Virus record (IMG/VR): IMGVR_UViG_3300044712_002668
Coordinates: 124,001 to 188,000 of that record
Reading direction: 5' to 3' (one strand)
DNA length: 64,000 nucleotides
The position numbers were made by a program, and so were the translations under genes. Under the pieces are notes generated by a model. That model did no database searches and was not told where the DNA came from. It worked only from the letters and a program-made list of their open reading frames with translations. Numbering within the stretch: position 1 is the stretch's first letter; every line of letters starts with the position of its first letter. Positions 37,378 through 63,274 of the stretch are shown here, piece after piece.

Positions 37378-38222
37378 AGCACTCCTTTGAATACGGTGTT
37401 CTTTATTTGCTTCCAGGTTGGCGCAACAATATCAGTACACATATAAACATTTCCATATGCATCTTGTTTCATATCACCGACAAATGTAGCGGCTGGCATA
37501 ACAGGATTTGTCAATGGACCTGGCGTGAAATCTGCTGTATATAAAGCTTGGCCAATTGTAATACGAACATCATCAACATAACCATACATGCTTTTTTGTC
37601 CGCCAGGAAATGGTGAGTAATATCCTATATTCCAATTTGCACTTGATCTCATTAAAAATTTAGAATCTACTGGAATAGTATTTTGTAGTTGACCATTTAG
37701 ATACATTTTTATACTAGTAGTACTATTATTTCGTACAACGGCTACATGATACCATTGGTTTGTAGTAAATGCGCTTGAGCCTATTGCTGCCACCCAATTA
37801 TTTGTCCCCTTCCTAGCCCATATAAACAAAAATATGTTATTATCAGTAATCAATATAGGACCTTGTTGATCAGCGTCAGTATAACTACAAAGAAACGCTT
37901 GGTATCCAATATTTACTTGTGTGGGATATATCCACATTTCAATTGTGAAATCTTTATCATCAAAATTTAAAAGACCCCTACTATTATCCAGAGTTACTTT
38001 GTTTGTTACAGTGCCATCAAAATAAAGAGATGACGATCCATATTTATATACTGATGTAGATATTACAGCCGAACCAGAAGCAGTGTATGTTTTGTTATAC
38101 AAACTGCTATCTGTCATTGCTTGAGATCCATTAGTTCCTTCACAATGAAATAGTGTTTTTGTATAAAACGCAGAGAAATCTGCAATTGGTACTTTGGGTG
38201 GCATTGGTGGAATGTAAGTCAT
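37374..38222 (-). CDS. LamG/ConA-like domain protein
   Basis: FHCEGTNGS...DSS, KYG, DFTIEMW, WYHVAVVR, YLNG, VDDVRITIG. Confidence 0.8.
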   Translation of the reverse strand: MTYIPPMPPKVPIADFSAFYTKTLFHCEGTNGSQAMTDSSLYNKTYTASGSAVISTSVYKYGSSSLYFDGTVTNKVTLDNSRGLLNFDDKDFTIEMWIYPTQVNIGYQAFLCSYTDADQQGPILITDNNIFLFIWARKGTNNWVAAIGSSAFTTNQWYHVAVVRNNSTTSIKMYLNGQLQNTIPVDSKFLMRSSANWNIGYYSPFPGGQKSMYGYVDDVRITIGQALYTADFTPGPLTNPVMPAATFVGDMKQDAYGNVYMCTDIVAPTWKQIKNTVFKGVL

Positions 38223-41300: not shown

Positions 41301-43546
41301 TATTTCAGCTAAATGGAATACCATTGGATTTGGTTGCGGACACAGCTTATGCTGTTGGTGGTACTATAAAAGCTGTAGGAACAATATCAGGTTACACTGG
41401 AATAGCTGCTAATACAGCCGGTGGGGCTGTAACTATAAAGGGCGGAGATAGATACAACTCTGCTTCTGGCAATAGTGGTGGAAGTGTTAGTATTTTAGGA
41501 ACTGATGGATATAATCCAGGTGCTGTAACAATACAATCTGGATCTGCAACAGGAACAGTTGCAGGGGGTAATGCCCCAACAATCACCATTGCTGGTGGAG
41601 CTGGTAATGCTTATACAGATGGCAGCTCTATAAGTTTATCTGGTGGTGCTGGTGGTGCTGGAAGAAATGGTGGAAGTATTACACTTACATCAGGTGGCGG
41701 CGCCGGTCCAAGCGGTGGTATAACAATACAAACATCATCTTCTGGCGGTATTGCTGGTCCTATTGTTATTCAGACAGGAAACTCATCTACATCAAGTGAT
41801 ATCACTATTCAAGCTCAAGGCGGTTCTAGTGGTAACGTTAATATTTACACTTCTGCAGGAAGTACTGCTGGAAATATAAATATCAAAGCAGCACTTGGTG
41901 GTTCATCAGGCGGTGGAGGAAATGTAAATCTTTCTTCTTGTAGCGGTACAACGGGTACAGCAGCATCTTTATCATTAATAGCGGCAAACAATACTACTGC
42001 TGTAAATGCTGATGGTCAGATAAGTATGATTGGCGCACAGATAATATCTGCCAACATGATAAAATCAAGACAGTATCCAAACGATAGCAATACTCAGCTT
42101 TGGTATAAACTTGATGAAACAGGAACACCTTGGGCTAACTCTGGAGCGCTTGGCACATTGAATATGACAAAAACAGGAGCTAGCACAGTATCAGTTGTGC
42201 CAGGTTTATTTGGAACAAATGCCGTTTTGTTTACTGCAGGAAACTCTTCTATATTGACTACAGGAGCAACCTCATTAGGAGAATATTCCACTTTCACACT
42301 TTCGTTTTGGGGTTATTTGAACTCATATTCGAGCGGAGGAATATTTGTAATAAAGCATTATTGGTTGGCCTCTAGTATTTGGGGAACGCCATATGGTTTG
42401 ATTGTATCTCTGGATGGTGGTGGAGTGGGTGGATGGATGATTAACGTTCCAGATAATTCTGGAACCACACAACATCAAACTGTTATGCCTACAAAGCTAC
42501 CACTAAAGAAATGGATACATATAGGAATGACAGTTGACGGCTCTAATAACATAAACCTATATCAAAACGGAGCTTTAGTATATTCAGCAGCTCTTGGGTA
42601 TACAGTAGGATATGGAAGTACTCATGGTGCTTGGAATATAGGAGGATATGTAGCTTCAAATGCTGTTGGTCAGCCATTGGACGGCATTGTTGAGGATGTT
42701 AGGATGGAAAACGTTGTAAGAAATCCTAAGTATTTCTCTGATGTTTATGGAATGGGTATAGGTAAGATTATGTATGATGGAAGTACTGCTGCTGATACTA
42801 ATACATATCTAAAATGGACATTTGACGAACAGAACGGACCTTGGGCACATAGTGGAAGTTATGGTAGTGCTTTATCTATGGCTTCCGGTCAAGGAACAAC
42901 AAATATAGTTCCAGGAATAATTGGAAGCGGAATAAATACATCAAATGGTCATGTTCTAACGGCTGCTACTAGCGTTTCCCCAGGAAACACATTTACAGTT
43001 TCAGCTTGGGTTTATCTTTACAACTACATATTAGCAACGGCAGATAATCAGCAAGGAATCATTGTATCAAAGAATTATAATACTGCATCATGGGGAAATC
43101 CATTTATTTCAATACATATGGAGTTAACAAATGATCGTGATGGTTCTTGGACGGCTTATGTAAATAACGGATCTCTTAACTCAATTACTATTCAAGAGCC
43201 TTTCAAAATACCTCTAAACACATGGTCTTTGGTAGCTATAACATATGACGGATCATCTTTTAAAGCATATCTGAACGGAGTTTTGGCAGGATCAATACCT
43301 GTAACTGGAAATGTAAATTATGGAAATAATGGACCATGGATGGTTGGTGGTCACTCATGGGTATCTCCGTACCAATTTTTTGATGGTGTTATTGATGATG
43401 TTAGGATTGAAAACACTGTAAGAAGTGCGGCTTATTTGCAGGCAATGTATCAAAAAGCTTTTGCTGGTATAACATATGTAGATAGGGACGGAAATTTGGT
43501 GTATCAATCACCAAATGGCACTATCTCTGTAATGGGAGCTGGTTGA
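38321..43546 (+). CDS. Large collagen-containing fibre protein with tandem repeats and two C-terminal LamG domains
   Basis: GPT/GAT collagen triplets, 117-aa repeats, Gly-rich 'GG.I.I..G' repeats, two LamG motif sets. Confidence 0.8.
38996..40399 (+). repeat. Four tandem 351-nt (117-aa) in-frame repeats
   Basis: STDGY codons start at 38996, 39347, 39698, 40049, 40400 (exact 351-nt period). Confidence 0.9.
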
Positions 43547-48061: not shown

Positions 48062-48727
48062 ATGGCCTACGTTCTTTATGTTGCTGATACGGAAACAACA
48101 GGTACAGATGCTGAGAAGCATGACATCATAGAAGTATGTTTTTGGAGAGTTGGATCTCTAGATAACATACTTACCCAAGATGACAATAAAACTTGGTGGA
48201 TGAAACCATTGAACGTAGCCTCCATTGAAGATGAGGCTTTACGGGTAAACAAACACAAAAAAGAAGATATTCTACATAAGACTGCAGAAGGTAAGGAAAA
48301 GTATAAACATCCATCTGAAGTTCTGCCAGAAATCGAGATGTGGTTTATGCAGGATGGGGCGGCAGCAGAGGAACGTGTACTCGTAGGTCATAACCCAGAT
48401 TTCGATTATAAGTTTCTTCTCAAGTTATGGGAAAAGTCTGGCAATGCCAATGAGTTTCCTATTGGCTATTGGATAGATAACAGTGATGGTACAAGAAGGC
48501 ATCAGATCTTTAAGTATGATACAATGGAGCTTGTACGTTTGATTGATCTGTGTACAGGAAAGAAAAGAAACTACTATAATCTAAGCTCTTTGGTTAAAGC
48601 CTTTAACATAACAAAGGCTCAGGCACATAGAGCTGATGGTGATACAAAAATGACAAAAGATTTGTTCCTCAAAATTATCGAGGTGCTAAAACCTGTTTTG
48701 AGTGAGAAGTTTTCTGATTGTTACTAG
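48062..48727 (+). CDS. DEDDh 3'-5' exonuclease (DnaQ-like)
   Basis: DTETTG, GHNPDFD, DT, AHRADGD. Confidence 0.88.
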   Translation: MAYVLYVADTETTGTDAEKHDIIEVCFWRVGSLDNILTQDDNKTWWMKPLNVASIEDEALRVNKHKKEDILHKTAEGKEKYKHPSEVLPEIEMWFMQDGAAAEERVLVGHNPDFDYKFLLKLWEKSGNANEFPIGYWIDNSDGTRRHQIFKYDTMELVRLIDLCTGKKRNYYNLSSLVKAFNITKAQAHRADGDTKMTKDLFLKIIEVLKPVLSEKFSDCY

Positions 48728-51576: not shown

Positions 51577-53082
51577 ATGTCAAAAGATAAAGTTAAGACG
51601 GAAGATAAGCCTCTTATTCCAGAAGGTAAATATGATGTTACCGATGTCAAAGAATTGAACTTCTTTGATCTATCTGGAGAAAAGGCAAAAACAAAAGGTA
51701 CTTCTAATAAGTTTTATCATGCCGAAATCCAGAAAGAAAAATCTGGAACTCGTGTTCAGCTATATACTATGTACGGTGCCACTGGAAAAGTACAAGCCAG
51801 GGAGTGGCGGTATTTTTCAGATGAGCTTGCTGCCAAGAAAGAATTCAATAGAATTATTTCCAGCAAACTAAAAAAAGGATATGTAGAGATTGATGTAGCT
51901 CAAAGAGCTTTAGGATCTGATTCTGCTAAACAGATAACCAAACCAGTTGTTTTGGCAAATGCAGATCATCTTGTTACGCCTGTTTCTTCAAAGCTTGATG
52001 CTGGACAAAAAAGAATTGTTGAAATATTCTTTGGAAGTCAGGATCATTTCGTAGCTACCACTCTTAAATGTCCACTAGGACAGCTATCAAATACACAGAT
52101 AGATAAAGGCCGTGACGTTCTAAATCAAGCCAAAGATATTGTAAATAGTGGTAGTATTGATAAGAATAAGCTTACTGATTTAACCAATCAATTTTACGGC
52201 TTGATTCCACATAATCTAGGAGGAGGGGCTAGAGGTCAGATGACCGAGCTTCTTCTTGATACTCTTCCAAAGATTGTGGGAAAGGAAAGCGATCTTGATA
52301 CCTTGCTTGATGCGAAGCAAGTCAATGCTGTTTTGAAATCCGATTCAACTATTGATACAAAGTATGATAGTTTGAATTGTGATTTCCTTTCAGTAGATCC
52401 TTCTAGTGATATTTTCAAATTTATGTCCTCGTATTTTCAGGATACAAAAGTACGTGGACATGGTTATGATAAAGAGCGTGTAGTAAATATTTGGGAAATG
52501 AACCGCAAGGATGATAAAGAAAAAGCATTCTTGAAGAATACTGATATAATTGCAAAGCAATGTGGTAAACATTCCTTTGTTTCTGAAACTGAACGTTTAT
52601 CAGGTGGGAAGAATAAGCTGTGGACTCCTGATAAGCGTCCTGATTTAGATAAAGATTTGGTAAAGCTATATACCAATGCAAATGTTTGGTTGTGTTGGCA
52701 TGGAACCAGATCTGCTAATCTGGTTGGTATTACCAGGCGTGGTTTGTTGATTAGACCATCTGGAGCTGTGTATACTGGATCCATGTTTGGAGATGGTAAG
52801 TATTTTGCCTGGCAAAGTACAAAGTCTTTGAACTATACAGATGGTGGATATTGGACTGGAGGTAGACATAATGTATCTTCCAGGTTTATGTTTATCATGG
52901 ATGTTGCTATGGGTAAGCAACACATCTCTCATAATTCACACTTTTTCAAAAAACCACCAGCCGGATTTCATTCTGTATATGGTAAGGCAGGCTCTGGCTT
53001 GTGGAATGATGAAATGATTACATACGATTTTGATGATAAGGATAATCAGTCTGCAATAAGATACTTGTTGGAAATCGTTTAA
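51577..53082 (+). CDS. Poly(ADP-ribose) polymerase-like: WGR + regulatory + catalytic domain
   Basis: WGR-like 'SNKFY...YG.TG...K.KKGY'; regulatory 'CPLGQLS..QI..G...L', 'LTNQFYGLIPH'; catalytic H-Y-E triad WHGTR / MFGDGKYFA / NDEMITY. Confidence 0.9.
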   Translation: MSKDKVKTEDKPLIPEGKYDVTDVKELNFFDLSGEKAKTKGTSNKFYHAEIQKEKSGTRVQLYTMYGATGKVQAREWRYFSDELAAKKEFNRIISSKLKKGYVEIDVAQRALGSDSAKQITKPVVLANADHLVTPVSSKLDAGQKRIVEIFFGSQDHFVATTLKCPLGQLSNTQIDKGRDVLNQAKDIVNSGSIDKNKLTDLTNQFYGLIPHNLGGGARGQMTELLLDTLPKIVGKESDLDTLLDAKQVNAVLKSDSTIDTKYDSLNCDFLSVDPSSDIFKFMSSYFQDTKVRGHGYDKERVVNIWEMNRKDDKEKAFLKNTDIIAKQCGKHSFVSETERLSGGKNKLWTPDKRPDLDKDLVKLYTNANVWLCWHGTRSANLVGITRRGLLIRPSGAVYTGSMFGDGKYFAWQSTKSLNYTDGGYWTGGRHNVSSRFMFIMDVAMGKQHISHNSHFFKKPPAGFHSVYGKAGSGLWNDEMITYDFDDKDNQSAIRYLLEIV

Positions 53083-55907: not shown

Positions 55908-56426
55908 ATGACAAATAATCTTAAAAAAATTGCTACTTTAGCAGCAAAGAAAGCTGCCATTGAGACATATCGTTCTATTATGAAAATGGCCGATAGTGGT
56001 GGTGAAAAACAAATTAGTGCTCAAGAAGTTATAGAGAAAGCAATAATGCAATGGATTAATTATCTAATGCAAAAAATGCCATCTGATATTTTTGATTTAG
56101 TCAGAGGTAGAGAAACACAGTTTAATATTGATCCTGGCTGGGTAGTTTCTATTGGAGATACATTTGTTGTACCAGATGAAGAAAAAAAACTACCTGCAGA
56201 AAAACAAGAAACAACAATTTTAAATACTAAAATTAAGAATTATTTAATGTCTCAACTTCCAAATTTGACTAAACTTGTTGATAATGCAATTGCTGTAGAG
56301 AATAAAAGACGTCGAGATGAATATAATAAAATTCCTCCAAATAAAAGAATGGAAGCTGATAAGCATTTATTAAGACCTTATACTAAAAATGAATTTAGTA
56401 GACACTATCCAATATCTTGGGGTTAA
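55908..56426 (+). CDS. Hypothetical protein
   Basis: GAGG RBS, 172 aa. Confidence 0.6.
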   Translation: MTNNLKKIATLAAKKAAIETYRSIMKMADSGGEKQISAQEVIEKAIMQWINYLMQKMPSDIFDLVRGRETQFNIDPGWVVSIGDTFVVPDEEKKLPAEKQETTILNTKIKNYLMSQLPNLTKLVDNAIAVENKRRRDEYNKIPPNKRMEADKHLLRPYTKNEFSRHYPISWG

Positions 56427-56649
56427 TTTGCCTACAAAATATATAATTCTAGTAGAAGCTATAGCTCCAATTCAAGCAGAATTTGAAGTTATGGCAAATG
56501 ATGCAGAAGAGGCTTTCAATCTATTGCAGCAGGGTAAGTCTATACAGCTAAGACAAAAACCAAATGTCAATCTATTAAAGATGATAAAGAAAAAGGTTAC
56601 AATAAAAGAATATAATACTTCAATGATAAAACTAATCAAGAATATGTAA
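56389..56649 (+). CDS. Hypothetical protein
   Basis: Fills the gap; start uncertain. Confidence 0.45.
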   Translation: MNLVDTIQYLGVNLPTKYIILVEAIAPIQAEFEVMANDAEEAFNLLQQGKSIQLRQKPNVNLLKMIKKKVTIKEYNTSMIKLIKNM

Positions 56650-56708
56650 ATTCAATGTCGAGCAGGCTGCTGAAAAGGACTCCCATAACCAAAGGAGTCC
56701 TTTTCATT

Positions 56709-57347
56709 ATGTCCATAATTTTTTACGTTCTAGATACAGAAACGACAGGTTTGAAAACTGGATGGCATGAAATCAATCAAATATCAGTTCTTAACTCTGC
56801 ATCAAAAGATCAGATAACAATTGATATATGTGTTGACTACCCCGAAAGGGCTTCCAAAGAAGCCTTGGAAGTTCAAGGCAAATCAGTCCATGATCTGGAT
56901 AATGGAATTTCTCTGAAAGATGCAGTCATTCAAGTTAATGAATTCTTTCAGAAAGATAATTCAAATAAAGCTGCCAGGTGTATTGTGGCTCACAATGCTC
57001 CTTTTGATCGTAAATTTTGCCACTCAGCTTGGGACTCTGTTGAGTTGGAATTTCCTGCCGATTTGTGGATTTGTACCAAACAGTTGGCTCAAAGATATGT
57101 TAAAAAGTATGGTGGAGAAAAAATAGCTCAAGCTCAAAGCTCCCCGAAACCAAAGTTCGGTTTGAACAACTTCCTTCAAGGGGTAGGAATTACTCCAAAA
57201 TTAGGAGCACACCGTGCTGATACAGATACAATCAATACTCTTGAACTTTTCAATTGGTTGCTAAACTCTCAAACAGAATATGTTTCTCTTATCGAACGTA
57301 TCCCTCATAAAAAAGAAAACGTTAAAGATTTATTAGATTCTTATTAA
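56709..57347 (+). CDS. Second DEDDh 3'-5' exonuclease
   Basis: LDTETTG, AHNAPFD, AHRADTD; AGGAG upstream of MSIIF. Confidence 0.85.
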   Translation: MSIIFYVLDTETTGLKTGWHEINQISVLNSASKDQITIDICVDYPERASKEALEVQGKSVHDLDNGISLKDAVIQVNEFFQKDNSNKAARCIVAHNAPFDRKFCHSAWDSVELEFPADLWICTKQLAQRYVKKYGGEKIAQAQSSPKPKFGLNNFLQGVGITPKLGAHRADTDTINTLELFNWLLNSQTEYVSLIERIPHKKENVKDLLDSY

Positions 57348-57403
57348 TTTTTTAGCAACATCTACGCATACGGCGGAATAAGATGTTGCGCACTAGATTT
57401 TTC

Positions 57404-57431
57404 TTGACAGGGCGCACCAGATGAATACACT
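57404..57431 (+). promoter_or_regulatory. Sigma70-type promoter for the Ro60/TROVE unit
   Basis: TTGACA-N16-TACACT in GC-rich intergenic DNA. Confidence 0.6.
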
Positions 57432-57493
57432 GTGTTTCTTGGGTTTTTACCCGGCTGTGCGCCCAGATGCCACCAGGCAAGAAAGGCGCATAA

Positions 57494-57691
57494 ATGACAC
57501 AATTTGTAGGTAATTTGATTTCAGAATCTGTAGAAGCTCTTGATAAAGAAGAGACTGAGAAACGCAGATTAAAGAATAAAGCAAAAGCCTCTCGTAGAAA
57601 AGCGAGAGGCAATGAATCTGATCTGGAAAGAATTCAGAGGAAAAAAGTAAATTCTCTAAAAAAGAAGAATTCTTCTTCTAAAGAGAAATAA
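57494..57691 (+). CDS. Small highly basic protein
   Basis: 65 aa, K/R-rich, between the promoter and the TROVE gene. Confidence 0.5.
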   Translation: MTQFVGNLISESVEALDKEETEKRRLKNKAKASRRKARGNESDLERIQRKKVNSLKKKNSSSKEK

Positions 57692-57731
57692 GTCTACGCC
57701 ATACTTTAATGGCGCGAAATAGGAGGCATAC

Positions 57732-59327
57732 ATGTCTAGCGCAAAGTTTGTACAGCAAGTTATTGGTAACGATCCAAACCGTAAGGTTATCAAGATTGAT
57801 TCTTATTTGTCAGCTAACGAGACTGCTGAAGAGGCAGTGGCTCGTGTATTGCTGACTGGTATTTTGAAGAATCAATTCTATCGTTCGGTAGATGATATTA
57901 CAAAGGAAGCCCTACCTCTTGTAGAGAATATGGCAGATAGCAATCCTGAATATCTGCTTAAGGCGGCTTGTATTGCTCGTAATAGCCATATGAAGGGTAT
58001 GGTCAAGGTTGCCATTGCAGCAATCAACGGGCATGCAAATGATACTTTCTTGAATCGTGATGAGATCAAGGAAGCTATTGTTTCTTTGTTAGCAACATTC
58101 CATCCTGGTCAGTTGATTCAGTTTGTGGAACTGTGCAAGTCCAAGAAGTTTGGGCGTGGATTTGGTTCCAGACCCCAGAAGTGGGTTCGTTCTGCCATGG
58201 AGCGTTGGAATGCGTGGAAGCTTGAGGAGAATACCCTTAAGTATCCAACAGCATTGAATCAACTTGTACGTTTGGTTCATCCACGTTTCAAGGATGAGCG
58301 TGCTGGATTGGTATTGTACGTTCTTGATGGCAAGAAGTCTGAAGCAACTGGTGCTAAGCAGAAGGTTGTGGAAACTTTAAAGGCTGACACTTCTGATAAG
58401 AAGAAGATTGCCAATGCCATCTTGGATCATAAGATTCCATGGGATGTTATCAAGGGTTTTGCAGGCTTGGATGGTCCTATTGCCATGGCTGCAATGACTC
58501 AAATGGGATTGACGGCTTTATTGCTTAATATCCGTTCTTTGGAAGAGCATAATGTTTTCTCTACCACAGATGGATTGAGGGCTCTAAGCCTCAAGATGGA
58601 TGAGGTCAAGGATGGTCGTGCCATTCCTATGGACTTTGCAAAGCCATATATCTACGCTACCAATAGCAAGGTAAAAGATATCTTGCTGGATGCGATGGTA
58701 TCTACTCTTGATGTACCAATGCCTGCTATCGAAGGTAGGAAGGTTGGTGTGTCTGTTGATATCTCTGGTTCTATGGCCGGTGAAACTCTTAAAACTGCCG
58801 GTCTTCTTGCAGTTCCTTTCCTGAAGGCAAATGATTTGTGGTTTACTACTTTTGATACTTCATTGTATGAAGAGGGTAATACCATTAATCAGGGACGTAG
58901 GGATTTTTGGGGTTATTCCTCAAATGGTTTCTGTCCTAAGTTGAAGGGTAGGAGTCGCAAAGATCAAGTGAAGTCTTTGCTTGATTTGAAGACCGCTGGT
59001 GGAACCGATGTCTCCCAGCCAATTGTTCATGCAATTGCTTCACAAAGGTTTTTGGATGTTATGGTGCTTATCACCGATGAGCAGCAGAATGCCGGAACTC
59101 CTTTGATGAGGGTTTGGAATGAGTATTTGGCAAAGGTAAACCCAAGAGCCCATCTTTGGGTAATCAATGCCACAAATTCAAACTGGCATGCTGCAGATTT
59201 TGGTCATAGGAATGTTACAGTGTATCAGACTATGACCCCAGCATTATTCAAGAATCTTGAATACGTTGGTCAGGACTTGGTCAAAGCCATCAAAGACTTT
59301 GATTTCAAGGATGTTGGGAAGCGTTAG
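57732..59327 (+). CDS. Ro60/Rsr-like TROVE domain RNA-binding protein with vWA domain
   Basis: 'LLTG....QFY', 'GRGFGSRPQK....', 'LKYP...LVRLVHP', 'IPW', 'MGLTALLLNI..L'; vWA MIDAS DISGSM, GGTD, LITDEQ; AGGAGG RBS. Confidence 0.9.
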   Translation: MSSAKFVQQVIGNDPNRKVIKIDSYLSANETAEEAVARVLLTGILKNQFYRSVDDITKEALPLVENMADSNPEYLLKAACIARNSHMKGMVKVAIAAINGHANDTFLNRDEIKEAIVSLLATFHPGQLIQFVELCKSKKFGRGFGSRPQKWVRSAMERWNAWKLEENTLKYPTALNQLVRLVHPRFKDERAGLVLYVLDGKKSEATGAKQKVVETLKADTSDKKKIANAILDHKIPWDVIKGFAGLDGPIAMAAMTQMGLTALLLNIRSLEEHNVFSTTDGLRALSLKMDEVKDGRAIPMDFAKPYIYATNSKVKDILLDAMVSTLDVPMPAIEGRKVGVSVDISGSMAGETLKTAGLLAVPFLKANDLWFTTFDTSLYEEGNTINQGRRDFWGYSSNGFCPKLKGRSRKDQVKSLLDLKTAGGTDVSQPIVHAIASQRFLDVMVLITDEQQNAGTPLMRVWNEYLAKVNPRAHLWVINATNSNWHAADFGHRNVTVYQTMTPALFKNLEYVGQDLVKAIKDFDFKDVGKR

Positions 59328-59964
59328 TAGACGCTGAAGACATTGGTACGTGAATGTAGCGGACCTCGGGCGTAGCAGCTCGGGGTCCGTTGCAGTTTGG
59401 TAGCTGCAATAATTGCGTTCCTATCAAACCACCAATTCCAATCAATAATCCAACCAACAATCTAATCATTGCAGTTTGACGTTCTTCGCTGACCTTTTGA
59501 TCGCTCTTTTTCTTTTCGTGTTGAAGTTCTAGTTCTTTATCTATACTGTTTCTATGGCGTTTTTCTTCTTCGGTTATTTTATCTTTTACTTCTGTTACAG
59601 TACCAACAATTTCGCCAACTTTTTTACTGACAGCTTCAACATCATCTTTTATAGATGATAAATCTTTCTGACTGTTTTGATGTACATCTATATGGGATTC
59701 AAGCCATTTTTCTATATTTGATATTCTTTGTTCTATAAGGGCCATTCTAGTTAAAATAGAAGTAGCCCCATTACCATCTCTTATTACATCTGATAGGGCT
59801 TTTACGTTTTCTCTTAATATATTTAATTCTGTTTTTACAGTAGCAAAATCAGCTTCTGATTCTTTGATTTCATTTAAAAGAGTATGTGTAAGTTGAGATG
59901 TGGAATCCAAACCCTCTGCTAATCGTTCAAGTAAAACATCATTTATGTTCTTGGGAGGTGCCAT
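59305..59964 (-). CDS. Coiled-coil protein with C-terminal transmembrane helix
   Basis: Long heptad-rich region followed by LLVGLLIGIGGLIG. Confidence 0.65.
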   Translation of the reverse strand: MAPPKNINDVLLERLAEGLDSTSQLTHTLLNEIKESEADFATVKTELNILRENVKALSDVIRDGNGATSILTRMALIEQRISNIEKWLESHIDVHQNSQKDLSSIKDDVEAVSKKVGEIVGTVTEVKDKITEEEKRHRNSIDKELELQHEKKKSDQKVSEERQTAMIRLLVGLLIGIGGLIGTQLLQLPNCNGPRAATPEVRYIHVPMSSASTNASQHP

Positions 59965-60112
59965 GAGTAACTTCTCCAATTATTTGGGCAGTATTTTTAC
60001 AAGCCTCTCTACAATATCTTATATTTTTAATAGTTCTTTTCAATCGGAATTTTAATTTATTTATATTACTTTCTAATTCTTCAACTGTTCTATTGATATC
60101 ATCTTCACTCAT
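59939..60112 (-). CDS. Small coiled-coil hypothetical protein (57 aa, not in the ORF track)
   Basis: MSEDDINRTVEELESNINKLKFRLK...; GGAG upstream; overlaps the start of the next gene. Confidence 0.45.
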   Translation of the reverse strand: MSEDDINRTVEELESNINKLKFRLKRTIKNIRYCREACKNTAQIIGEVTHGTSQEHK

Positions 60113-60274
60113 AATATACTCCGATTTGTTTCCACATTAATAAGTGATCTTATGCATGTAATACTTGTTTTCAGGGTCGAGAGTCTGAAAAAATCGTACT
60201 TGAGGTTTAATTCTTTGAAAAACTGGTAATATTTAGTCATATACCTGAGGCTGTCAGAAAACGGTAGAAAGCCG

Positions 60275-60303
60275 TTGACAGGCTGGGTGAGACAGGTTAG
60301 ACT
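60275..60303 (+). promoter_or_regulatory. Sigma70-type promoter for the small-RNA/tRNA cluster
   Basis: TTGACA-N17-TAGACT. Confidence 0.7.
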
Positions 60304-60340
60304 GGGTGAGTTCGGTTGGCTTTCTAAACCATCCGAGCAC

Positions 60341-60457
60341 TGGTAAACGCGCCGTAGACGTTTCATCATCAATCAACGATTCTAGGTGGTTCGAATCCAC
60401 CAGACGGGCTTGGTAACGGGGAAACCCGGCCTATTCGTCTGCATCTTTCGTTTACCA
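60341..60457 (+). ncRNA. Y-RNA-like RNA 1 (contains a tRNA T-arm)
   Basis: TGGTAAACG/CGTTTACCA helix, GTAGACG/CGTCTGC helix, TTTCATCA linker, GGTGG-TTCGAAT-CCACC T-arm, CGGG-GAAA-CCCG. Confidence 0.7.
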
Positions 60458-60496
60458 ATTTTATTCCTATCATTATGTAAAAGTGATGGTAGGGGC

Positions 60497-60570
60497 TATT
60501 GAACGCGCTAGCTGATCTTTCATCAATATTGCTAATTGAACCTGTGGGTCAGCGTAATTTTCGTTCAATA
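60497..60570 (+). ncRNA. Y-RNA-like RNA 2
   Basis: TATTGAACG/CGTTCAATA, GCTGATC/GGTCAGC, TTTCATCA, 5-bp stem with 7-nt loop ATTGCTA. Confidence 0.7.
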
Positions 60571-60643
60571 TTTTTTTTATTCATGGAATAAGGTGATATA
60601 TAAATGAATATGAATTTGTCAGCTCGAATATGAACGCCCATTT

Positions 60644-60724
60644 GGGGCGTGAGGCATCTGGTAGAGGCCGCCAGTCTTATAAACTGGGAAGATAACGAGC
60701 AGAGTTCAAATCTCTGACGCCCCA
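60644..60724 (+). tRNA. tRNA-Ile(UAU)
   Basis: Acceptor GGGGCGT/ACGCCCC-A, anticodon arm CCAGT-CTTATAA-ACTGG, T-arm CAGAG-TTCAAAT-CTCTG; long variable region; no encoded CCA. Confidence 0.8.
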
Positions 60725-60747
60725 CTGGGTATAGTGAAAATTTAATA

Positions 60748-60819
60748 CGGGGTATAGGACAGAGGTAGTCCGCTAGTTTTGGGAACTAGAAGTCGCTGGT
60801 TCAAATCCAGCTACCCCGA
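60748..60819 (+). tRNA. tRNA-Pro(UGG)
   Basis: CGGGGTA/TACCCCG-A, D-arm GGAC/GTCC, CTAGT-TTTGGGA-ACTAG, GCTGG-TTCAAAT-CCAGC. Confidence 0.92.
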
Positions 60820-60821
60820 CA

Positions 60822-60898
60822 GATAACGCGATACAATATCTTTCATCATAATAATTGGGATATTACACGAAAACAAGGTATTGTTAATTTTCGTTATC
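60822..60898 (+). ncRNA. Y-RNA-like RNA 3
   Basis: GATAACG/CGTTATC, ACAATATC/GGTATTGT, TTTCATCA, 5-bp stem with 7-nt loop ATTGGGA. Confidence 0.7.
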
Positions 60899-60903
60899 AA
60901 CTT

Positions 60904-60927
60904 AAACCACCTTTTGGTGGTTTTTTT
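60904..60927 (+). terminator. Terminator of the RNA cluster
   Basis: AAACCACC-tttt-GGTGGTTTTTTT. Confidence 0.8.
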
Positions 60928-60967
60928 GTTTTAAGGGAATATTTTTGCTTATAGGTGGCAGGTAAAT

Positions 60968-61837
60968 ATGGGATCACCTAATTTGAATAAGTTTCTTTCT
61001 TCATTACAAGAAATGTCTACGTTTTTCACTACTGATGAGAGTTTTAAAAAAACAGAAGCATCTCCTTACAAACCTATTGTAAACTGGTGTGCTACTTTCT
61101 TGCAAAAATATCCAGCAAGCGTAAAAGATATAAATTGGGATGCTCAGTTCAATTCGATGCTTGTTAGTTTCAATAATACTATAAATCAAGTATCTAAAGA
61201 ATATAGAATAAACGTACCAAGAGATAGTCTTAAAATATTTCCTCCAGGTAAAAATTCTTTTTCTGATAAGCCAGATGAAAATCTTAGATTGATAGAGAGT
61301 TCTTCTGAAGAAAATTATCAAATTATAACAAGATGGGTTTCTGGTATTAAAACTGGCTTTGTTTGGAGTGGTCCAGTTGGCAGGATGGTTACGCAGTTTA
61401 AACAACTTTCTGAATTTATTTTAGATGAAGGTGTTCAAGAAGGTTTGAAAAAATTAAATAATATAGCTTTGCAAGTAGCTTTGACTTCATGGGCTAAACA
61501 AGGTAGAGCATTTATATTTTACCCACAATTTGGTTGGGATGATAGATTAGATAAATATTTAGAAATGTGCAATACTTGGTTTGCAACTATGGGATTTCTT
61601 AAAGTTAAATTCCAATTATCAGCAAGACAGGGTAGAGAGCATAATATAAAAACCATTACCCAAGAAAATGATAAAAGAGCTCTATTTAATATAGATTTAT
61701 TAAAAAAAATAGCAAACATCTTACAGAAAAGATTAGGATTACATGTAAGAGATGTAGCTCAAAAGAAAGCTAATAAATCATTAAAACAAATAGAAAAATG
61801 TGCTTCATACTTTTTATCTCATTGTAAAAAATCTTGA
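60968..61837 (+). CDS. Hypothetical protein
   Basis: 289-aa ORF, no recognisable family. Confidence 0.65.
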   Translation: MGSPNLNKFLSSLQEMSTFFTTDESFKKTEASPYKPIVNWCATFLQKYPASVKDINWDAQFNSMLVSFNNTINQVSKEYRINVPRDSLKIFPPGKNSFSDKPDENLRLIESSSEENYQIITRWVSGIKTGFVWSGPVGRMVTQFKQLSEFILDEGVQEGLKKLNNIALQVALTSWAKQGRAFIFYPQFGWDDRLDKYLEMCNTWFATMGFLKVKFQLSARQGREHNIKTITQENDKRALFNIDLLKKIANILQKRLGLHVRDVAQKKANKSLKQIEKCASYFLSHCKKS

Positions 61838-61928
61838 GGTCGAGGGCAAGGGTACAGCAAGCAATCTGTATTGCTAACTCAATATGGCATTTCATATTGA
61901 GGGATAGCAACTTGTCCTTTATCTCGAA
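61834..61928 (+). ncRNA. Putative structured RNA element (three-way junction)
   Basis: AGGGCAAG/CTTGTCCT closing helix, TACAG/CTGTA hairpin, TTGCTA/TAGCAA plus CTCAATATG/CATATTGAG hairpin. Confidence 0.45.
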
Positions 61929-61936
61929 GTTAAAAA

Positions 61937-62695
61937 ATGAAGACAATTGTTTTTGATTTGAATGGTACATTAACAGAATCTAAATCCGATATTGATCCAG
62001 AAATGCTAAGCTTGCTTGTCAAGCTACTTAGCAAACAAAAGGTATGTATCCTATCCGGTGCTTCTTGGAAGCAGATAGAGAAACAAATTATTTCATATCT
62101 TCCTACAAAAGATATCAACATACTAAATAATTTGTATGTACTACCAACAGCAGGAGCTAGTTTATTCCAATATTGGAATAAGTATGGCTGGGTAGCTATT
62201 TATCAGAACAAGCTTGATAAACATGAGTCTGATAAAATTTCCAAGGTACTTGAAAAGTATTTGAAGCAGAATTCTCTATCTGACAGGTTGTGGGGTAAGC
62301 AGGTGGAGAACAGAGAGTCTCAAGTAACTTTGTCTTGCCTTGGTCAAAAGGCCCCGCTTGATGATAAGGAAAATTGGGATCCTGATTTTTCCAAGCGTAA
62401 AGCAATTGTTTCAGAGTTAGTAAAAGAACTGCCTAATTTTGACTTGCGTATTGCTGGGTATAATTCAATTGATATTACCCCAAAGGGTATTAATAAACAC
62501 TCTGGACTTCATCAGTTGATGAAGCATTTGCATATCAGCAAAGATGAGGTTGTATTTGTTGGTGATGCAATTTTCGAGGGTGGTGTTGACTATCCTGTAG
62601 TTGATATCGGTATTGAGTTTGTAAAAGTAACTTCTATTGATGAAACCAAGAAATTTTTAACTCAATTGCTTGTGGTAGCAGATAAGGCGGCATAA
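61937..62695 (+). CDS. HAD-IIB phosphomannomutase-like hydrolase
   Basis: FDLNGTLTESK, SGA, ENRESQ, WDPD..KR, SIDITPKGINK, FVGDAIFEGG.DYP. Confidence 0.8.
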   Translation: MKTIVFDLNGTLTESKSDIDPEMLSLLVKLLSKQKVCILSGASWKQIEKQIISYLPTKDINILNNLYVLPTAGASLFQYWNKYGWVAIYQNKLDKHESDKISKVLEKYLKQNSLSDRLWGKQVENRESQVTLSCLGQKAPLDDKENWDPDFSKRKAIVSELVKELPNFDLRIAGYNSIDITPKGINKHSGLHQLMKHLHISKDEVVFVGDAIFEGGVDYPVVDIGIEFVKVTSIDETKKFLTQLLVVADKAA

Positions 62696-62697
62696 CC

Positions 62698-62934
62698 ATG
62701 AGAGCAGATGAGTTTTCAGTTTGGTACCATGCCTATATGGCTGGTATCCAGGCAAGAGGTAGTTCCTCTCAAGAGATTGATGCTGTTATTACCGATGCTG
62801 TAACAGTTGCTTCTGTTGCCTTGGAAAAATACAAGAAAGTTGATATCGATACCGATAAAAACAAAATGATGGAAAAGGCTTTACAAGATACTGTCAATAA
62901 AATATCCGAAAAGTTATCAAGTATAAAAGGTTGA
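62698..62934 (+). CDS. Hypothetical protein
   Basis: 78-aa coupled ORF. Confidence 0.5.
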   Translation: MRADEFSVWYHAYMAGIQARGSSSQEIDAVITDAVTVASVALEKYKKVDIDTDKNKMMEKALQDTVNKISEKLSSIKG

Positions 62935-62945
62935 TAATTTGATAT

Positions 62946-63061
62946 ATAAGCGGAACGCGAGTTTAGAATCACCATTAGTATAATGGCAGTACGGTACTCA
63001 TATGAGTACCAGTGCAGGTTCGAATCCTGTAGGTGATTTATACAAATTTCGTTCCGCTTAT
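62946..63061 (+). ncRNA. Y-RNA-like RNA 4 (YrlA-like architecture, with a tRNA-like domain)
   Basis: 12-bp ATAAGCGGAACG/CGTTCCGCTTAT, AATCACC/GGTGATT acceptor-like helix, D-like GTAT-AATGGCA-GTAC, palindromic GGTACTCATATGAGTACC arm, T-arm GCAGG-TTCGAAT-CCTGT. Confidence 0.8.
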
Positions 63062-63076
63062 TTATTTAAGGGTTAA

Positions 63077-63274
63077 ATGCAAGATGAATTTCTTAGAGAG
63101 AGAATATCAGCTGTTGGAAGTTATGGTAAAATACTAGAGATAGTATTTGATGATATGTATAGGGAATTTGAAACGTCTTATAATAAAAAATTTCATAAAC
63201 TTGGGAATCTTCATTGTATAATAAAATACAAAGATATAGATGATAATGTAATGTTTTATTGTGTTCCAAGGTAA
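63077..63274 (+). CDS. Small hypothetical protein
   Basis: 65-aa ORF. Confidence 0.45.
   Translation: MQDEFLRERISAVGSYGKILEIVFDDMYREFETSYNKKFHKLGNLHCIIKYKDIDDNVMFYCVPR

What the first reader, a model, noticed from the sequence alone, without database searches (positions are those of the whole stretch)
57404..63061. Candidate phage Ro60 (TROVE) system with a family of modular Y-like RNAs carrying different tRNA-mimic inserts
Seen: a TROVE-vWA gene, followed within about 3.7 kb by four non-coding elements (60341-60457, 60497-60570, 60822-60898, 62946-63061). They share one scaffold: a terminal helix ending AACG/CGTT, an internal loop CG.. opposite a pyrimidine-rich ..TTT, and a second 7-8 bp helix; three also have the linker TTTCATCA. 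Helix sequences differ between copies but pairing is kept (compensatory change), so structure appears to be under selection. Each scaffold holds a different payload derived from tRNA. Known: Ro60/Rsr binds the terminal stem of Y RNAs, bacterial YrlA RNAs carry a tRNA-like domain, and Ro/Yrl loci exist in some bacteria and a few phages. Inference: this is a constant Ro-binding handle plus a variable tRNA-mimic cargo, interleaved with real tRNAs and driven by host-type promoters. It could be an early anti-defence or tRNA-protection system (decoys for anticodon nucleases or tRNA-modifying toxins), or an adaptor set that tethers Ro to different partners. The handle consensus does not look to me like the canonical GNCGA-type Y-RNA stem, so it may be a separate family.
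Basis: partly seen in the sequence, partly recalled or inferred. Interest (0 to 1): 0.93.

Follow-up and report, generated by a model that had tools for sequence, protein, structure and literature searches.

The report
Huge-phage Ro60 with modular Y-like RNAs
An uncultivated huge phage encodes a Ro60 ring protein and, next to it and inside its tRNA gene arrays, a previously undescribed family of small structured RNAs that share one Ro-type docking stem but carry different heads (some tRNA-like), which extends the known Ro60/Y-RNA partnership to a new RNA subfamily rather than revealing a new kind of system.

Summary
The four elements lie at the stated coordinates. A simple scaffold pattern finds 4 copies where 0.02 are expected. 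A covariance model finds only these four in the 64 kb.

The same scaffold recurs on the TROVE strand, downstream of the gene, in 15 of 19 related loci, with TROVE identity down to 45%. Covariation is strong: 94% of cells are paired and 12 of 15 pairs show double changes.

The gene encodes a divergent Ro60/Rsr. The 13 best fold matches are all Ro60 or Rsr structures.

The shared handle is a terminal helix ending ACG/CGU, a bulged C, a G.U pair and a U-rich bulge on the opposite strand. This is the geometry of the vertebrate Ro60 site with a different sequence.

Sister copies in the same phage genome carry YrlA-type permuted tRNA domains, which give sub-threshold RF02553 matches.

The elements abut tRNA genes with gaps of 0-11 nt, between a sigma-70-like promoter and a terminator. 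They are therefore probably cut out by tRNA-processing enzymes.

Two claims do not hold. Only E1 and E4 carry tRNA-like payloads. The anticodon-nuclease decoy idea fits poorly, because most payloads have no anticodon loop.

Verdict: a new Y/Yrl RNA subfamily of huge phages. Ro60 binding and function remain inferred.

The parts
56655..57347 (+). DEDDh (RNase_T/DnaQ-type) 3'-5' exonuclease; conserved neighbour and candidate nuclease partner
   Evidence: Pfam RNase_T E=1.8e-11. NCBIfam gives only generic DEDD/PolC-type exonuclease matches. It lies just upstream of TROVE in about 17 loci, down to 34% identity, and also in L176-L179. RNA versus DNA specificity is not resolved.
57404..57431 (+). Sigma-70-like promoter (TTGACA, 16 nt, TACACT) ahead of the small basic protein and TROVE genes
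   Evidence: The same TTGACAGG-type box precedes the RNA clusters in the window, L006, L015 and L018. This is a consensus match only.
57494..57691 (+). Small Arg/Lys-rich protein (65 aa), conserved in position between the exonuclease and TROVE
   Evidence: Homologues with the core KRKxRNKRKAxRR are present in 9 of 9 loci examined. No Pfam or PHROG match.
57732..59327 (+). Ro60/Rsr orthologue (TROVE HEAT-repeat ring plus vWA domain with MIDAS)
   Evidence: phmmer aligns it end to end with D. radiodurans Rsr 2nvo_A, E=1.6e-8. Pfam vWA_Ro60 E=7e-8. NCBIfam Rsr matches residues 34-491 at 38.6 bits. The AlphaFold model has pLDDT 81.5, and its 13 best PDB matches are all Ro60/Rsr; 2nvo gives TM 0.72/0.76. 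D343, S345 and S347 are invariant in 32 homologues.
60275..60303 (+). Sigma-70-like promoter (TTGACA, 17 nt, TAGACT) about 40 nt upstream of E1
   Evidence: Conserved counterparts lie 33-36 nt upstream of the first element in L006, L015 and L018.
60341..60457 (+). E1: Y-like RNA with the handle, UUUCAUC, a T-arm (UUCGAAU loop) and a closed stem with a GG-containing bulge (reduced YrlA-type head)
   Evidence: R1 35.4 bits, E=4e-7, not in the training set. Fold. Orthologues at L003:12757-12873, L039:1062-1183 and L019:9196-9313 show covarying T-arm pairs.
60497..60570 (+). E2: short Y-like RNA (handle, UUUCAUC, small apical hairpin; YrlB-like)
   Evidence: R1 61.7 bits. MFE z-score -3.1.
60644..60725 (+). 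tRNA-Ile(UAU) with an unusually long variable region, co-transcribed with the elements
   Evidence: ARAGORN. Rfam tRNA 41.7 bits.
60748..60820 (+). tRNA-Pro(UGG); its 3' end is 1 nt from the 5' end of E3
   Evidence: ARAGORN. Rfam tRNA 69.4 bits. Gap table.
60822..60898 (+). E3: short Y-like RNA (handle, UUUCAUC, A/U-rich loop)
   Evidence: R1 62.3 bits. Fold.
60904..60930 (+). Intrinsic terminator closing the unit E1-E2-tRNA-tRNA-E3
   Evidence: 8-bp stem followed by a T run. Similar hairpin-plus-T-run terminators follow the clusters in L002, L003 and L013.
62946..63061 (+). E4: 12-bp handle helix (bulged C, G.U) enclosing a normal-topology tRNA-like cloverleaf whose anticodon arm is a closed palindrome; it lacks UUCAUC
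   Evidence: R1 22.3 bits, E=0.0012 in the window. Rfam tRNA 34.2 bits at 62968-63038. ARAGORN reports 'tRNA-???' with an abnormal anticodon loop. MFE -47.2 kcal/mol, z=-7.5. No syntenic counterpart in L003.

Best explanation
The window holds the RNA-surveillance module of an uncultivated huge phage. Its own contig is 454,833 bp. The module has two parts.

(a) A conserved gene trio: a DEDDh 3'-5' exonuclease, a small Arg/Lys-rich protein, and a divergent Ro60/Rsr ring protein.

(b) A multi-copy family of Y-RNA-type non-coding RNAs. Four copies lie within 3.7 kb downstream of Ro60. At least five more lie in a tRNA array about 30 kb away in the same genome.

Every copy has the same docking handle. 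The 5' and 3' ends pair in a 6-12 bp helix that ends ACG/CGU. Then come an invariant bulged C, a G.U pair, a U-rich bulge on the 3' strand and a second helix (typically AGAUC/GGUCU). Nearly all copies then carry an invariant single-stranded UUCAUC. The head beyond this is modular. It can be a small hairpin (E2, E3), a T-arm with a reduced tRNA elbow (E1), a full YrlA-type permuted tRNA (elsewhere in the genome), or a normal-topology tRNA-like cloverleaf (E4).

Proposed mechanism:
- The RNAs are transcribed with tRNAs from sigma-70-like promoters. RNase P and the tRNA 3'-end machinery release them.
- The handle docks on the outer surface of the phage Ro60 ring, as Y RNAs do.
- The variable head and the UUCAUC strand tether or gate a partner. 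The most likely partner is an exoribonuclease, either the adjacent DEDDh enzyme or host PNPase. For tRNA-like heads, proteins that recognise the tRNA elbow are also candidates.
- The result would be a set of specialised Ro RNPs that degrade, trim or check structured RNAs (tRNA, rRNA) during infection.

Shown here: the RNA family, its structure and covariation, the Ro60 fold, the genomic linkage, and the layout within tRNA operons.

Inferred: transcription and processing, Ro60 binding, the partner nuclease, and the biological role.
For: The RNA family is real.
- 4 copies against 0.023 expected.
- R1 finds 35 sites in 29 sources, all on the TROVE strand and downstream of TROVE. Further sites are in L039, L048, L176, L178 and L179.
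- 15 of 19 non-redundant TROVE-clade loci with at least 1.4 kb of downstream sequence carry the elements, with TROVE identity down to 45%.
- Covariation: 94% of cells paired, 12 of 15 pairs with double changes, score 0.473 against at most 0.078 for slid controls.
- C6, G7 and C8, and UUCAUC, are invariant across the copies that have these positions (33-35 of 35 rows).

The elements are specific to this phage clade.
- A pattern scan of IMG/VR followed by R1 gives scores of 33 bits or more only in four contigs, all of which encode this TROVE clade.
- 120 pattern-matching stretches from bacterial and archaeal genomes score at most 30.8 bits.

The protein is Ro60.

The handle resembles a Y RNA.
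- The vertebrate Ro60 site is a 7-bp helix, one bulged C and a bulge on the opposite strand (PMC4726728). Chen et al. describe Ro60 contacting the GGUCCGA strand (PMC4201824).
- The phage handle has helix, bulged C and G.U opposite a U-rich bulge.

There is a link to YrlA.
- RF02553 aligns the T-arm, closed acceptor stem and D-arm of L039:2413-2551 (33.1 bits) and of L048:692-820 (37.8 bits). Both carry the new handle.
- Positive control: RF02553 finds a YrlA beside the Ro gene of Gordonia phage Neville at 44.1 bits.

The layout points to processing by tRNA enzymes.
- The gap from a tRNA 3' end to an element 5' end is 0-2 nt in 9 cases. The gap from an element 3' end to the next tRNA 5' end is 4-11 nt in 7 cases.
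- Promoters and terminators bracket the clusters.

The gene context fits RNA processing or repair.
- The exonuclease and the small basic protein are conserved next to TROVE.
- Relatives also place a CCA-adding-type nucleotidyltransferase, a metallo-beta-lactamase, a P-loop kinase and an RNA ligase nearby.

Precedent: phage phiLo Ro60 binds two phage-encoded Yrl RNAs and host PNPase (PMC12135203).
Against: - There is no expression or binding data of any kind.
- The handle lacks the GNCGAA/CGAA motif of characterised bacterial and phage Yrl RNAs. No Rfam Y-type family matches in the window.
- Four TROVE-clade loci (L005, L010, L177, L180) have no element within the sequence available.
- Many copies lie 30-50 kb from TROVE inside tRNA arrays. 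Proximity to TROVE is therefore not obligatory, and a tRNA-centred role independent of Ro60 is possible.
- Synteny in these phages is conserved generally: the minus-strand genes downstream of TROVE are also conserved. Gene adjacency is therefore weak functional evidence.
- The exonuclease looks as much like a DnaQ/PolC proofreading domain as like an RNase.
- The covariation alignment was fitted to the model.
Confidence: 0.65

Rival explanations
1. The elements are tRNA-operon accessory RNAs that do not work through Ro60. They could be punctuation or stability structures that guide RNase P, RNase Z or RNase E processing of long tRNA-array transcripts. Alternatively, they could be ligands of the conserved small Arg/Lys-rich protein, since arginine-rich peptides typically bind bulged helices.
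For: The elements abut tRNAs with gaps of 0-11 nt. About half of the known copies in two genomes lie in tRNA arrays 30-50 kb from TROVE. Four TROVE loci lack nearby elements. An Arg/Lys-rich protein is conserved in the module.
Against: Simple processing spacers would not need an invariant bulged-C/G.U motif plus an invariant UUCAUC across TROVE divergence down to 45%. High-scoring copies were found only in contigs that encode this TROVE clade. The handle geometry matches the known Ro60 site. YrlA-type heads occur on the same handle.
Confidence: 0.15
2. The tRNA-like heads are decoys or sponges that protect phage or host tRNAs from tRNA-targeting defence nucleases or toxins, with Ro60 as stabiliser.
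For: Huge phages carry tRNA arrays and RNA-repair genes that are thought to counter attacks on tRNA (PMC7824862). An RNA ligase, a P-loop kinase and a CCA-adding-type enzyme lie near TROVE in relatives. One family member, L039:2210-2323, encloses a tRNA-Ile(UAU)-like cloverleaf with an intact 7-nt anticodon loop.
Against: Most copies have no tRNA-like part at all. YrlA-type heads lack an anticodon arm. E4's anticodon arm is a closed palindrome with a 4-nt loop. The features that anticodon nucleases recognise are therefore usually absent. What is conserved is the tRNA elbow, not the anticodon.
Confidence: 0.08
3. The elements are selfish repeats (MITE-like, with terminal inverted repeats) that spread within tRNA regions, and they have no RNA function.
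For: They have terminal inverted repeats, occur in several copies per genome, and cluster in intergenic tRNA regions.
Against: Copies within one genome are highly diverged apart from the motifs (mean column identity 57%). Pairing is kept by compensatory changes. All copies share the strand of the flanking tRNAs and of TROVE. The motifs are conserved across phages whose TROVE proteins are only 45-69% identical. All of this points to selection on an RNA structure, not recent transposition.
Confidence: 0.03

Closest known systems
Bacterial and mycobacteriophage YrlA/YrlB RNAs (Rfam RF02553; Chen et al. 2014, PMC4201824)
   Same: They are encoded near a Ro60/Rsr gene on the same strand. There are several per genome. 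The 5' and 3' ends pair in a stem that holds the presumed Ro site. At least one copy per genome has a permuted tRNA-like head (T-arm, then a closed acceptor stem, then a D-arm), and others are short hairpins. In M. smegmatis, YrlA and YrlB are processed from one precursor and YrlA is cut by RNase P.
   Different: The handle sequence is RAACG-C-G ... UUUUU-CGUU, not GNCGAAN0-1G. An invariant UUCAUC follows helix 2. RF02553 gives no match in the window and only 33-38 bits (gathering score 69) on the best relatives, and that score comes from the tRNA-like part only. Copy number is higher (at least 9 in this genome). Copies are embedded directly in tRNA arrays. Some heads are normal-topology cloverleaves (E4, L039:2210-2323).
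Thermus phage phiLo Ro60 with Yrl1/Yrl2 (PMC12135203; PDB 9KOP, 9L5Y)
   Same: A phage-encoded Ro60 has phage-encoded Y-like RNAs next to the gene. The stem-bulge-stem architecture is the same. The authors report an experimentally shown ternary complex with host PNPase.
   Different: phiLo has two RNAs, located upstream of the gene, with a CGAA motif. The protein is only distantly related: phmmer E=0.2, Foldseek TM 0.60/0.68. phiLo is not a huge phage and its RNAs are not described as part of tRNA arrays.
Vertebrate Y RNAs (lower-stem Ro60 site)
   Same: A terminal helix is followed by a single bulged cytidine, with a small bulge on the opposite strand and then an upper stem. A variable loop confers specialisation (PMC4726728). 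From memory only: a UUAUC motif follows the upper stem in vertebrate Y RNAs and nematode sbRNAs, in the position of UUCAUC here.
   Different: The sequence differs (GGUCCGA/UUGACC against AACGCG/UUUCGUU). Vertebrate Y RNAs are single RNA polymerase III genes with a La-binding U tail, not units cut from tRNA operons. No homology is claimed.
Deinococcus radiodurans Yrn1-Rsr-PNPase (RYPER)
   Same: This is the functional model adopted here. The Y RNA tethers the Ro ring to a 3'-5' exoribonuclease and gates access for structured substrates (PMC4726728, PMC4201824).
   Different: No PNPase gene was seen in the window. The only candidate nuclease encoded next to TROVE belongs to the DEDDh family, and its substrate is unknown.

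Membership tests
Y RNA / Yrl RNA (Ro60-associated ncRNA) | Encoded close to, and on the same strand as, a Ro60/Rsr orthologue | tested here: met
   The four window copies lie 1.0-3.7 kb downstream of TROVE on the + strand. 15 of 19 related loci show the same arrangement. Further copies lie 30-50 kb away in the same genomes.
Y RNA / Yrl RNA (Ro60-associated ncRNA) | 5' and 3' ends pair in a long stem, followed by an internal loop and a variable module | tested here: met
   Two helices are supported by covariation: 94% of cells paired, 12 of 15 pairs with double changes. Heads range from about 15 to about 100 nt.
Y RNA / Yrl RNA (Ro60-associated ncRNA) | Conserved Ro-binding sequence motif (GGUCCGA in animals; GNCGAAN0-1G or CGAA in bacterial and phage Yrl RNAs) | tested here: not met
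   The consensus is G-G-U-A-A-C-G-C-G-(C/A). Only the CG core is shared, and only copies with ...CGCGAAG approach the motif. Motif definitions come from PMC4201824 and PMC12135203.
Y RNA / Yrl RNA (Ro60-associated ncRNA) | Geometry of the Ro60 site: a helix with a single bulged C and a bulge on the opposite strand | tested here: met
   ACG-[C]-G lies opposite U-rich-U-CGU. C8 is invariant in 35 of 35 copies, and the G.U pair is kept in 31 (A-U in 2). The geometry definition comes from PMC4726728.
Y RNA / Yrl RNA (Ro60-associated ncRNA) | At least one copy per genome with a tRNA-like (T-arm/D-arm) domain | tested here: met
   E1 has a T-arm with a UUCGAAU loop. L039:2410-2563, in the same genome, has a T-arm, a closed acceptor stem and a canonical D-arm that RF02553 aligns. 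The same is seen at L048:692-832 and in L179.
Y RNA / Yrl RNA (Ro60-associated ncRNA) | Reaches the Rfam RF02553 (YrlA) or RF00019 (Y_RNA) gathering score | tested here: not met
   No Y-type match in 57300-63200 at E<=10. The best relatives reach 33.1 and 37.8 bits against a gathering score of 69. The control in Gordonia phage Neville reaches 44.1 bits.
Y RNA / Yrl RNA (Ro60-associated ncRNA) | Physically bound by Ro60 and dependent on it for accumulation | not testable with these tools
   This needs RIP, EMSA or Northern blots.
Ro60/Rsr protein | HEAT-repeat (TROVE) ring closed by a vWA domain | tested here: met
   The model has pLDDT 81.5. Its 13 best PDB matches are all Ro60/Rsr, and 2nvo gives TM 0.72/0.76. 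phmmer aligns it full-length to 2nvo_A, E=1.6e-8.
Ro60/Rsr protein | MIDAS motif DxSxS in the vWA domain | tested here: met
   D343, S345 and S347 are invariant in 32 homologues.
Ro60/Rsr protein | Passes the curated family thresholds (Pfam TROVE PF05731; NCBIfam Rsr NF041674) | tested here: not met
   Only PF25045 vWA_Ro60 passes (33 bits against a cut-off of 27.7). There is no PF05731 match at E<=0.01. NF041674 scores 38.6 bits against a cut-off of 900. This is a divergent clade.
tRNA (applies to the core of E4, 62968-63038) | Cloverleaf with a canonical T-arm and D-arm | tested here: met
   Rfam RF00005 34.2 bits against a gathering score of 29. ARAGORN also reports it.
tRNA (applies to the core of E4, 62968-63038) | 7-nt anticodon loop and free acceptor ends | tested here: not met
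   ARAGORN reports 'tRNA-???' with a two-base anticodon. The arm is an 18-nt perfect palindrome that folds as 7 bp plus a 4-nt loop. The acceptor stem continues into the 12-bp handle.

The most novel reading that the evidence does not exclude
The handle may be a general, portable 'Ro60 docking tag' that huge phages attach to many different cargo RNAs. The cargo would include near-complete tRNAs in normal topology (E4, and a tRNA-Ile(UAU)-like cloverleaf with an intact anticodon loop at L039:2210-2323). Ro60 would then hold a reservoir of caged tRNA precursors and adaptor RNAs. RNase P and RNase Z could release or destroy them on demand, coupling tRNA supply, repair or turnover to the state of infection. 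The conserved UUCAUC strand, the small Arg/Lys-rich protein and the DEDDh exonuclease would be further fixed subunits of a multi-part RNP that has no described counterpart.
Probability: 0.15. Interest if true: 0.85.

Novelty: new variant of a known kind. Interest (0 to 1): 0.62.

Why it matters
Ro60/Y-RNA particles are conserved from bacteria to humans, yet it remains unclear how the RNA specialises the ring. This phage clade offers a natural series: one constant handle with at least four classes of head, and nine or more copies in a single genome. All are small enough for direct binding and structural work.

The finding also shows that a Ro-type site (bulged C, G.U and an opposite bulge) can be kept while its sequence is replaced. 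This explains why homology searches miss such RNAs, and it suggests that Y RNAs are under-counted in phage genomes.

The placement inside tRNA operons suggests a simple maturation route through RNase P and the tRNA 3'-end enzymes. It also ties Ro60 to the large tRNA arrays and RNA-repair genes of huge phages, whose roles are still debated.

In practice, these elements should be annotated as ncRNAs. E4-type copies should not be counted as tRNAs, and spurious ORFs should not be called over them.

Tried and rejected
- Rfam. At gathering thresholds, only the tRNAs match in the window. At E<=10 over 57300-63200 no Y-type family matches. I checked that this negative is meaningful: RF02553 does find a YrlA next to the Ro gene of Gordonia phage Neville.
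- Deposited phage genomes. Megablast of the region gave no match. tblastn of TROVE against the same collection gave at best 25% identity. No cultured relative is therefore available.
- Bacterial and archaeal genomes. A search for the TROVE clade in 185,579 species genomes found nothing.
- Strict DNA pattern in bacterial genomes. All score at most 30.8 bits with R1, which is the level expected when 20 bases are pre-selected. For the same reason I rejected L033 (30.9 bits) and L044 (28.7 bits) from IMG/VR as members.
- RNAalifold on the MAFFT alignment mis-registered helix 2. I specified the structure by hand for the model.
- Default cmsearch filters miss copies with long heads, for example L048:692-832. 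Copy numbers are therefore minimum estimates.
- I looked for E4 counterparts at the syntenic position in L003 and L002 and found none.
- I tried to assign the exonuclease to RNase T or to DnaQ. PDB and NCBIfam give only generic DEDDh matches.
- MITE, chance-hairpin and terminator explanations were rejected because of the covariation, the strand bias and the motif conservation.

Full report
**What is in the window**

The window has 36% G+C. Its TROVE protein is recorded on a contig of 454,833 bp, and an identical copy lies on a 335,988-bp IMG/VR contig. Other genes in the window include a tubulin-like protein, UvsW- and DnaB-type helicases, ribonucleotide reductase, ThyX, a GMP-reductase/IMPDH-type enzyme and very large Laminin_G_3 fibre-like proteins. 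This is an uncultivated huge phage. Megablast of the region finds nothing among 50,697 deposited phage genomes. The closest TROVE proteins there are 23-25% identical. A pattern-seeded search of 185,579 bacterial and archaeal species genomes found no relative of the TROVE clade.

**Check of the observation**

- A plain pattern (ACGCG, then 30-200 nt, then TT[TC]CGT, with a terminal helix of at least 6 bp) occurs four times, all on the + strand. The expectation is 0.023 per window in 300 first-order Markov simulations.
- I built covariance model R1 from 19 short copies, 17 of them from other loci. Run without filters over the whole window, it finds only these four: E3 62.3, E2 61.7, E1 35.4 and E4 22.3 bits. 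The next best hit scores 14.6 bits. E1 and E4 were not in the training set.
- ARAGORN and Rfam confirm two true tRNAs between the elements: Ile-UAU at 60644-60725 and Pro-UGG at 60748-60820. Both programs flag the core of E4 as tRNA-like but abnormal.

**The protein**

ORF 57732-59327 is a Ro60/Rsr orthologue.
- It aligns end to end with D. radiodurans Rsr (2nvo_A, E=1.6e-8).
- It matches Pfam vWA_Ro60 and, far below the cut-off, NCBIfam Rsr.
- An AlphaFold model built on 32 homologues has pLDDT 81.5. Its 13 best PDB matches are all Ro60 or Rsr structures, and 2nvo gives TM 0.72/0.76.
- The MIDAS residues D343, S345 and S347 are invariant.
- The clade is large: 91 clusters at 45-70% identity, many on contigs of 100-460 kb.

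**The RNA family**

I fetched loci that encode TROVE relatives and searched them with R1.
- The first search gave 35 hits, every one on the TROVE strand and downstream of the gene. More were found in L176, L178 and L179.
- Fifteen of 19 non-redundant loci with at least 1.4 kb of downstream sequence carry 1-5 copies, with TROVE identity down to 45%. L005, L010, L177 and L180 have none in the sequence available.
- The consensus is G-G-U-A-A-C-G-[C]-G-(C/A)-N2-3-(W)AGAUC-(U/A)UUCAUC-[head]-GGUCU-N3-6-UUUUU-CGUU-R-C-C.
- C6, G7 and C8, the UUCAUC block, and the U-CGU of the 3' strand are invariant or nearly so.
- Both helices covary. 94% of cells are paired, against 30-58% when the partner is slid. 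12 of 15 pairs show changes on both sides. The covariation score is 0.473 against at most 0.078. One caveat applies: that alignment was fitted to the model. The raw MAFFT alignment already shows the same compensations.

**Specificity**

A strict 20-base pattern was scanned over IMG/VR and then scored with R1. Scores of 33 bits or more occur only in four contigs, and all four encode this TROVE clade. All of them score at most 30.8 bits, which is the level expected from pre-selecting 20 bases. I therefore treat L033 and L044 (about 30 bits) as chance matches.

**More copies outside the window**

- In the window's own phage genome, a second cluster of five copies lies about 30 kb from TROVE inside a 10-tRNA array (L039).
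- The L003 phage has at least five copies in a 12-tRNA array 43-50 kb from its TROVE gene (L048).
- These copies reveal the range of heads:
  - short hairpins;
  - a T-arm plus a closed stem with a GG bulge (the E1 type);
  - full YrlA-type permuted tRNAs, with a T-arm, then a closed acceptor stem, then a canonical D-arm;
  - a normal-topology tRNA-Ile(UAU)-like cloverleaf, in which UUUCA of the conserved motif forms the 5' strand of the acceptor stem.
- RF02553 (YrlA) matches two of them below threshold: L039:2413-2551 at 33.1 bits and L048:692-820 at 37.8 bits. It aligns only the tRNA-like part, not the handle.
- As a positive control, RF02553 finds a YrlA at 44.1 bits just upstream of the Ro gene of Gordonia phage Neville. 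It also finds one at 33.7 bits near a distant phage TROVE gene in L007.
- The family is therefore a divergent branch of Y/Yrl RNAs with a replaced handle sequence.

**The handle compared with known Ro60 sites**

[quoted passage not shown] Ro60 mainly reads the GGUCCGA strand (PMC4726728; PMC4201824). Bacterial and phage Yrl RNAs have GNCGAAN0-1G or CGAA. The phage handle reads helix-ACG, bulged C, then G paired to U, opposite a U-rich bulge and CGU-helix. The geometry is the same and the letters differ. Whether this reflects descent or convergence cannot be decided here.

**Layout and likely biogenesis**

- In the window, a TTGACA-17-TAGACT promoter-like site (60275-60303) precedes E1, E2, tRNA-Ile, tRNA-Pro and E3. 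A hairpin-plus-T-run terminator (60904-60923) follows.
- Very similar TTGACAGG-type boxes lie 33-36 nt upstream of the first element in L006, L015 and L018. Terminators close the clusters in L002, L003 and L013.
- The number of promoter-like sites in the region is not above chance, so this rests on position and conservation.
- Across loci, the gap from a tRNA 3' end to an element 5' end is 0-2 nt in nine cases. The gap from an element 3' end to the next tRNA 5' end is 4-11 nt in seven cases.
- The simplest reading is co-transcription followed by release by RNase P and the tRNA 3'-end enzymes. M. smegmatis YrlA and YrlB are likewise cut from one precursor, and that YrlA is an RNase P substrate.

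**Gene context**

- A DEDDh exonuclease (56655-57347) lies immediately upstream of TROVE in about 17 loci, down to 34% identity.
- Between the exonuclease and TROVE, 9 of 9 loci examined encode a small Arg/Lys-rich protein with the core KRKxRNKRKAxRR.
- Relatives add a CCA-adding-type nucleotidyltransferase, a metallo-beta-lactamase, an AAA_33 P-loop kinase and an RNA ligase in the same neighbourhood.
- This resembles the RNA processing and repair setting of bacterial rsr loci.
- Two cautions apply. Synteny is conserved generally in these phages. The exonuclease cannot be told apart from DnaQ/PolC-type proofreading domains.

**Mechanism, and how sure I am**

- I am about 95% sure that this is a selected, structured RNA family.
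- I am about 65% sure that its members are Y-RNA-type partners of the phage Ro60.
- I am about 30% sure of the specific role, namely tethering or gating a 3'-5' exonuclease for decay, trimming or quality control of structured RNA such as tRNA or rRNA. That role follows the RYPER complex and phage phiLo.
Most copies have no tRNA-like part. YrlA-type heads have no anticodon arm. E4's anticodon arm is a closed 18-nt palindrome.
- What the tRNA-like heads do conserve is the elbow. That points to elbow-binding partners such as RNase P, the CCA-adding enzyme and T-loop or D-loop modifying enzymes.

**Novelty**

Several things are already known:
- phage Ro60 genes;
- phage Yrl RNAs (22 phages in Chen et al. 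2014; phiLo in 2025);
- the presence of TROVE genes in some jumbo phages (PMC7824862).

I found no paper describing this handle, the UUCAUC motif, the high copy number, the embedding in tRNA arrays or the normal-topology tRNA cargo. No Rfam family covers it. I therefore rate it a new variant of a known kind.

Noticed in passing
window 57494-57691 (+); homologues in L002-L006, L011, L015, L018: A small Arg/Lys-rich protein (44-102 aa, core KRKxRNKRKAxRR) is conserved in position between the DEDDh exonuclease and TROVE in all 9 loci examined. It has no Pfam or PHROG match. It could be a further RNA-binding subunit.
   Followed up: partly
L039:1062-2563 (- strand), same phage contig as the window, about 30 kb beyond TROVE: A second cluster of five scaffold elements is interleaved with ten tRNAs. 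It includes a YrlA-type permuted tRNA head and a tRNA-Ile(UAU)-like cloverleaf enclosed by the handle, which ARAGORN calls a tRNA.
   Followed up: yes
window 51577-53082 (+): A phage-encoded PARP-like protein has WGR, PARP regulatory and PARP catalytic domains (Pfam E=4e-10 to 5e-20). A WGR-PARP gene also lies near TROVE in the contig of P0089.
   Followed up: no
window 60644-60725 (+): tRNA-Ile(UAU) has a 9-nt insertion in the variable region (82 nt; Rfam 41.7 bits). This is unusual for an Ile tRNA. tRNA-Ile(UAU), tRNA-Pro(UGG) and tRNA-Met(CAU) recur beside the elements in many loci.
   Followed up: no
L175:3607-3723 (Gordonia phage Neville, NC_060131.1 about 56356-56472): A YrlA-like RNA (RF02553, 44.1 bits) sits just upstream of the Ro-like gene. 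It overlaps an annotated 'hypothetical protein' CDS (gp090), which is therefore probably a mis-annotation.
   Followed up: partly
L005:12493-12530 and 12781-12794: These look like relic 3' halves of elements (..GGGTTTGTCTGTTAAATTTCGTTACC and TAGATTTCGTTATC). They lie in a locus that has otherwise lost the cluster between the conserved flanking genes.
   Followed up: partly
L176, L177, L178 upstream of the exonuclease; L178:4550-6053; L179:1220-1732; L180:2873-3886: In relatives, the TROVE neighbourhood carries a CCA-adding-type nucleotidyltransferase (PolyA_pol plus HD), a metallo-beta-lactamase (possibly RNase Z-like), an AAA_33 P-loop kinase and an RNA ligase. In L180 a Tad3-family gene lies directly upstream of TROVE.
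   Followed up: no
window 48062-48727 (+): A second DEDDh exonuclease is present in the window. Its NCBIfam matches include RNase T (35.5 bits, far below the cut-off) and the epsilon-like C-terminal domain.
   Followed up: no
window 62992-63009 within E4: The 'anticodon arm' of E4 is a perfect 18-nt palindrome (GGTACTCATATGAGTACC).
   Followed up: partly
window 29456-34525, 34961-38222 (-), 38321-43546: A block of very large Laminin_G_3 (concanavalin-like lectin) proteins, probably fibres or receptor-binding proteins. Two of them have weak matches, below the curated cut-off, to a clostridial neurotoxin receptor-binding-domain family. This most likely reflects the shared lectin-like fold.
   Followed up: no
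window 16364-17704 (+): A tubulin/FtsZ-family protein (Pfam E=7e-17), as found in some jumbo phages.
   Followed up: no
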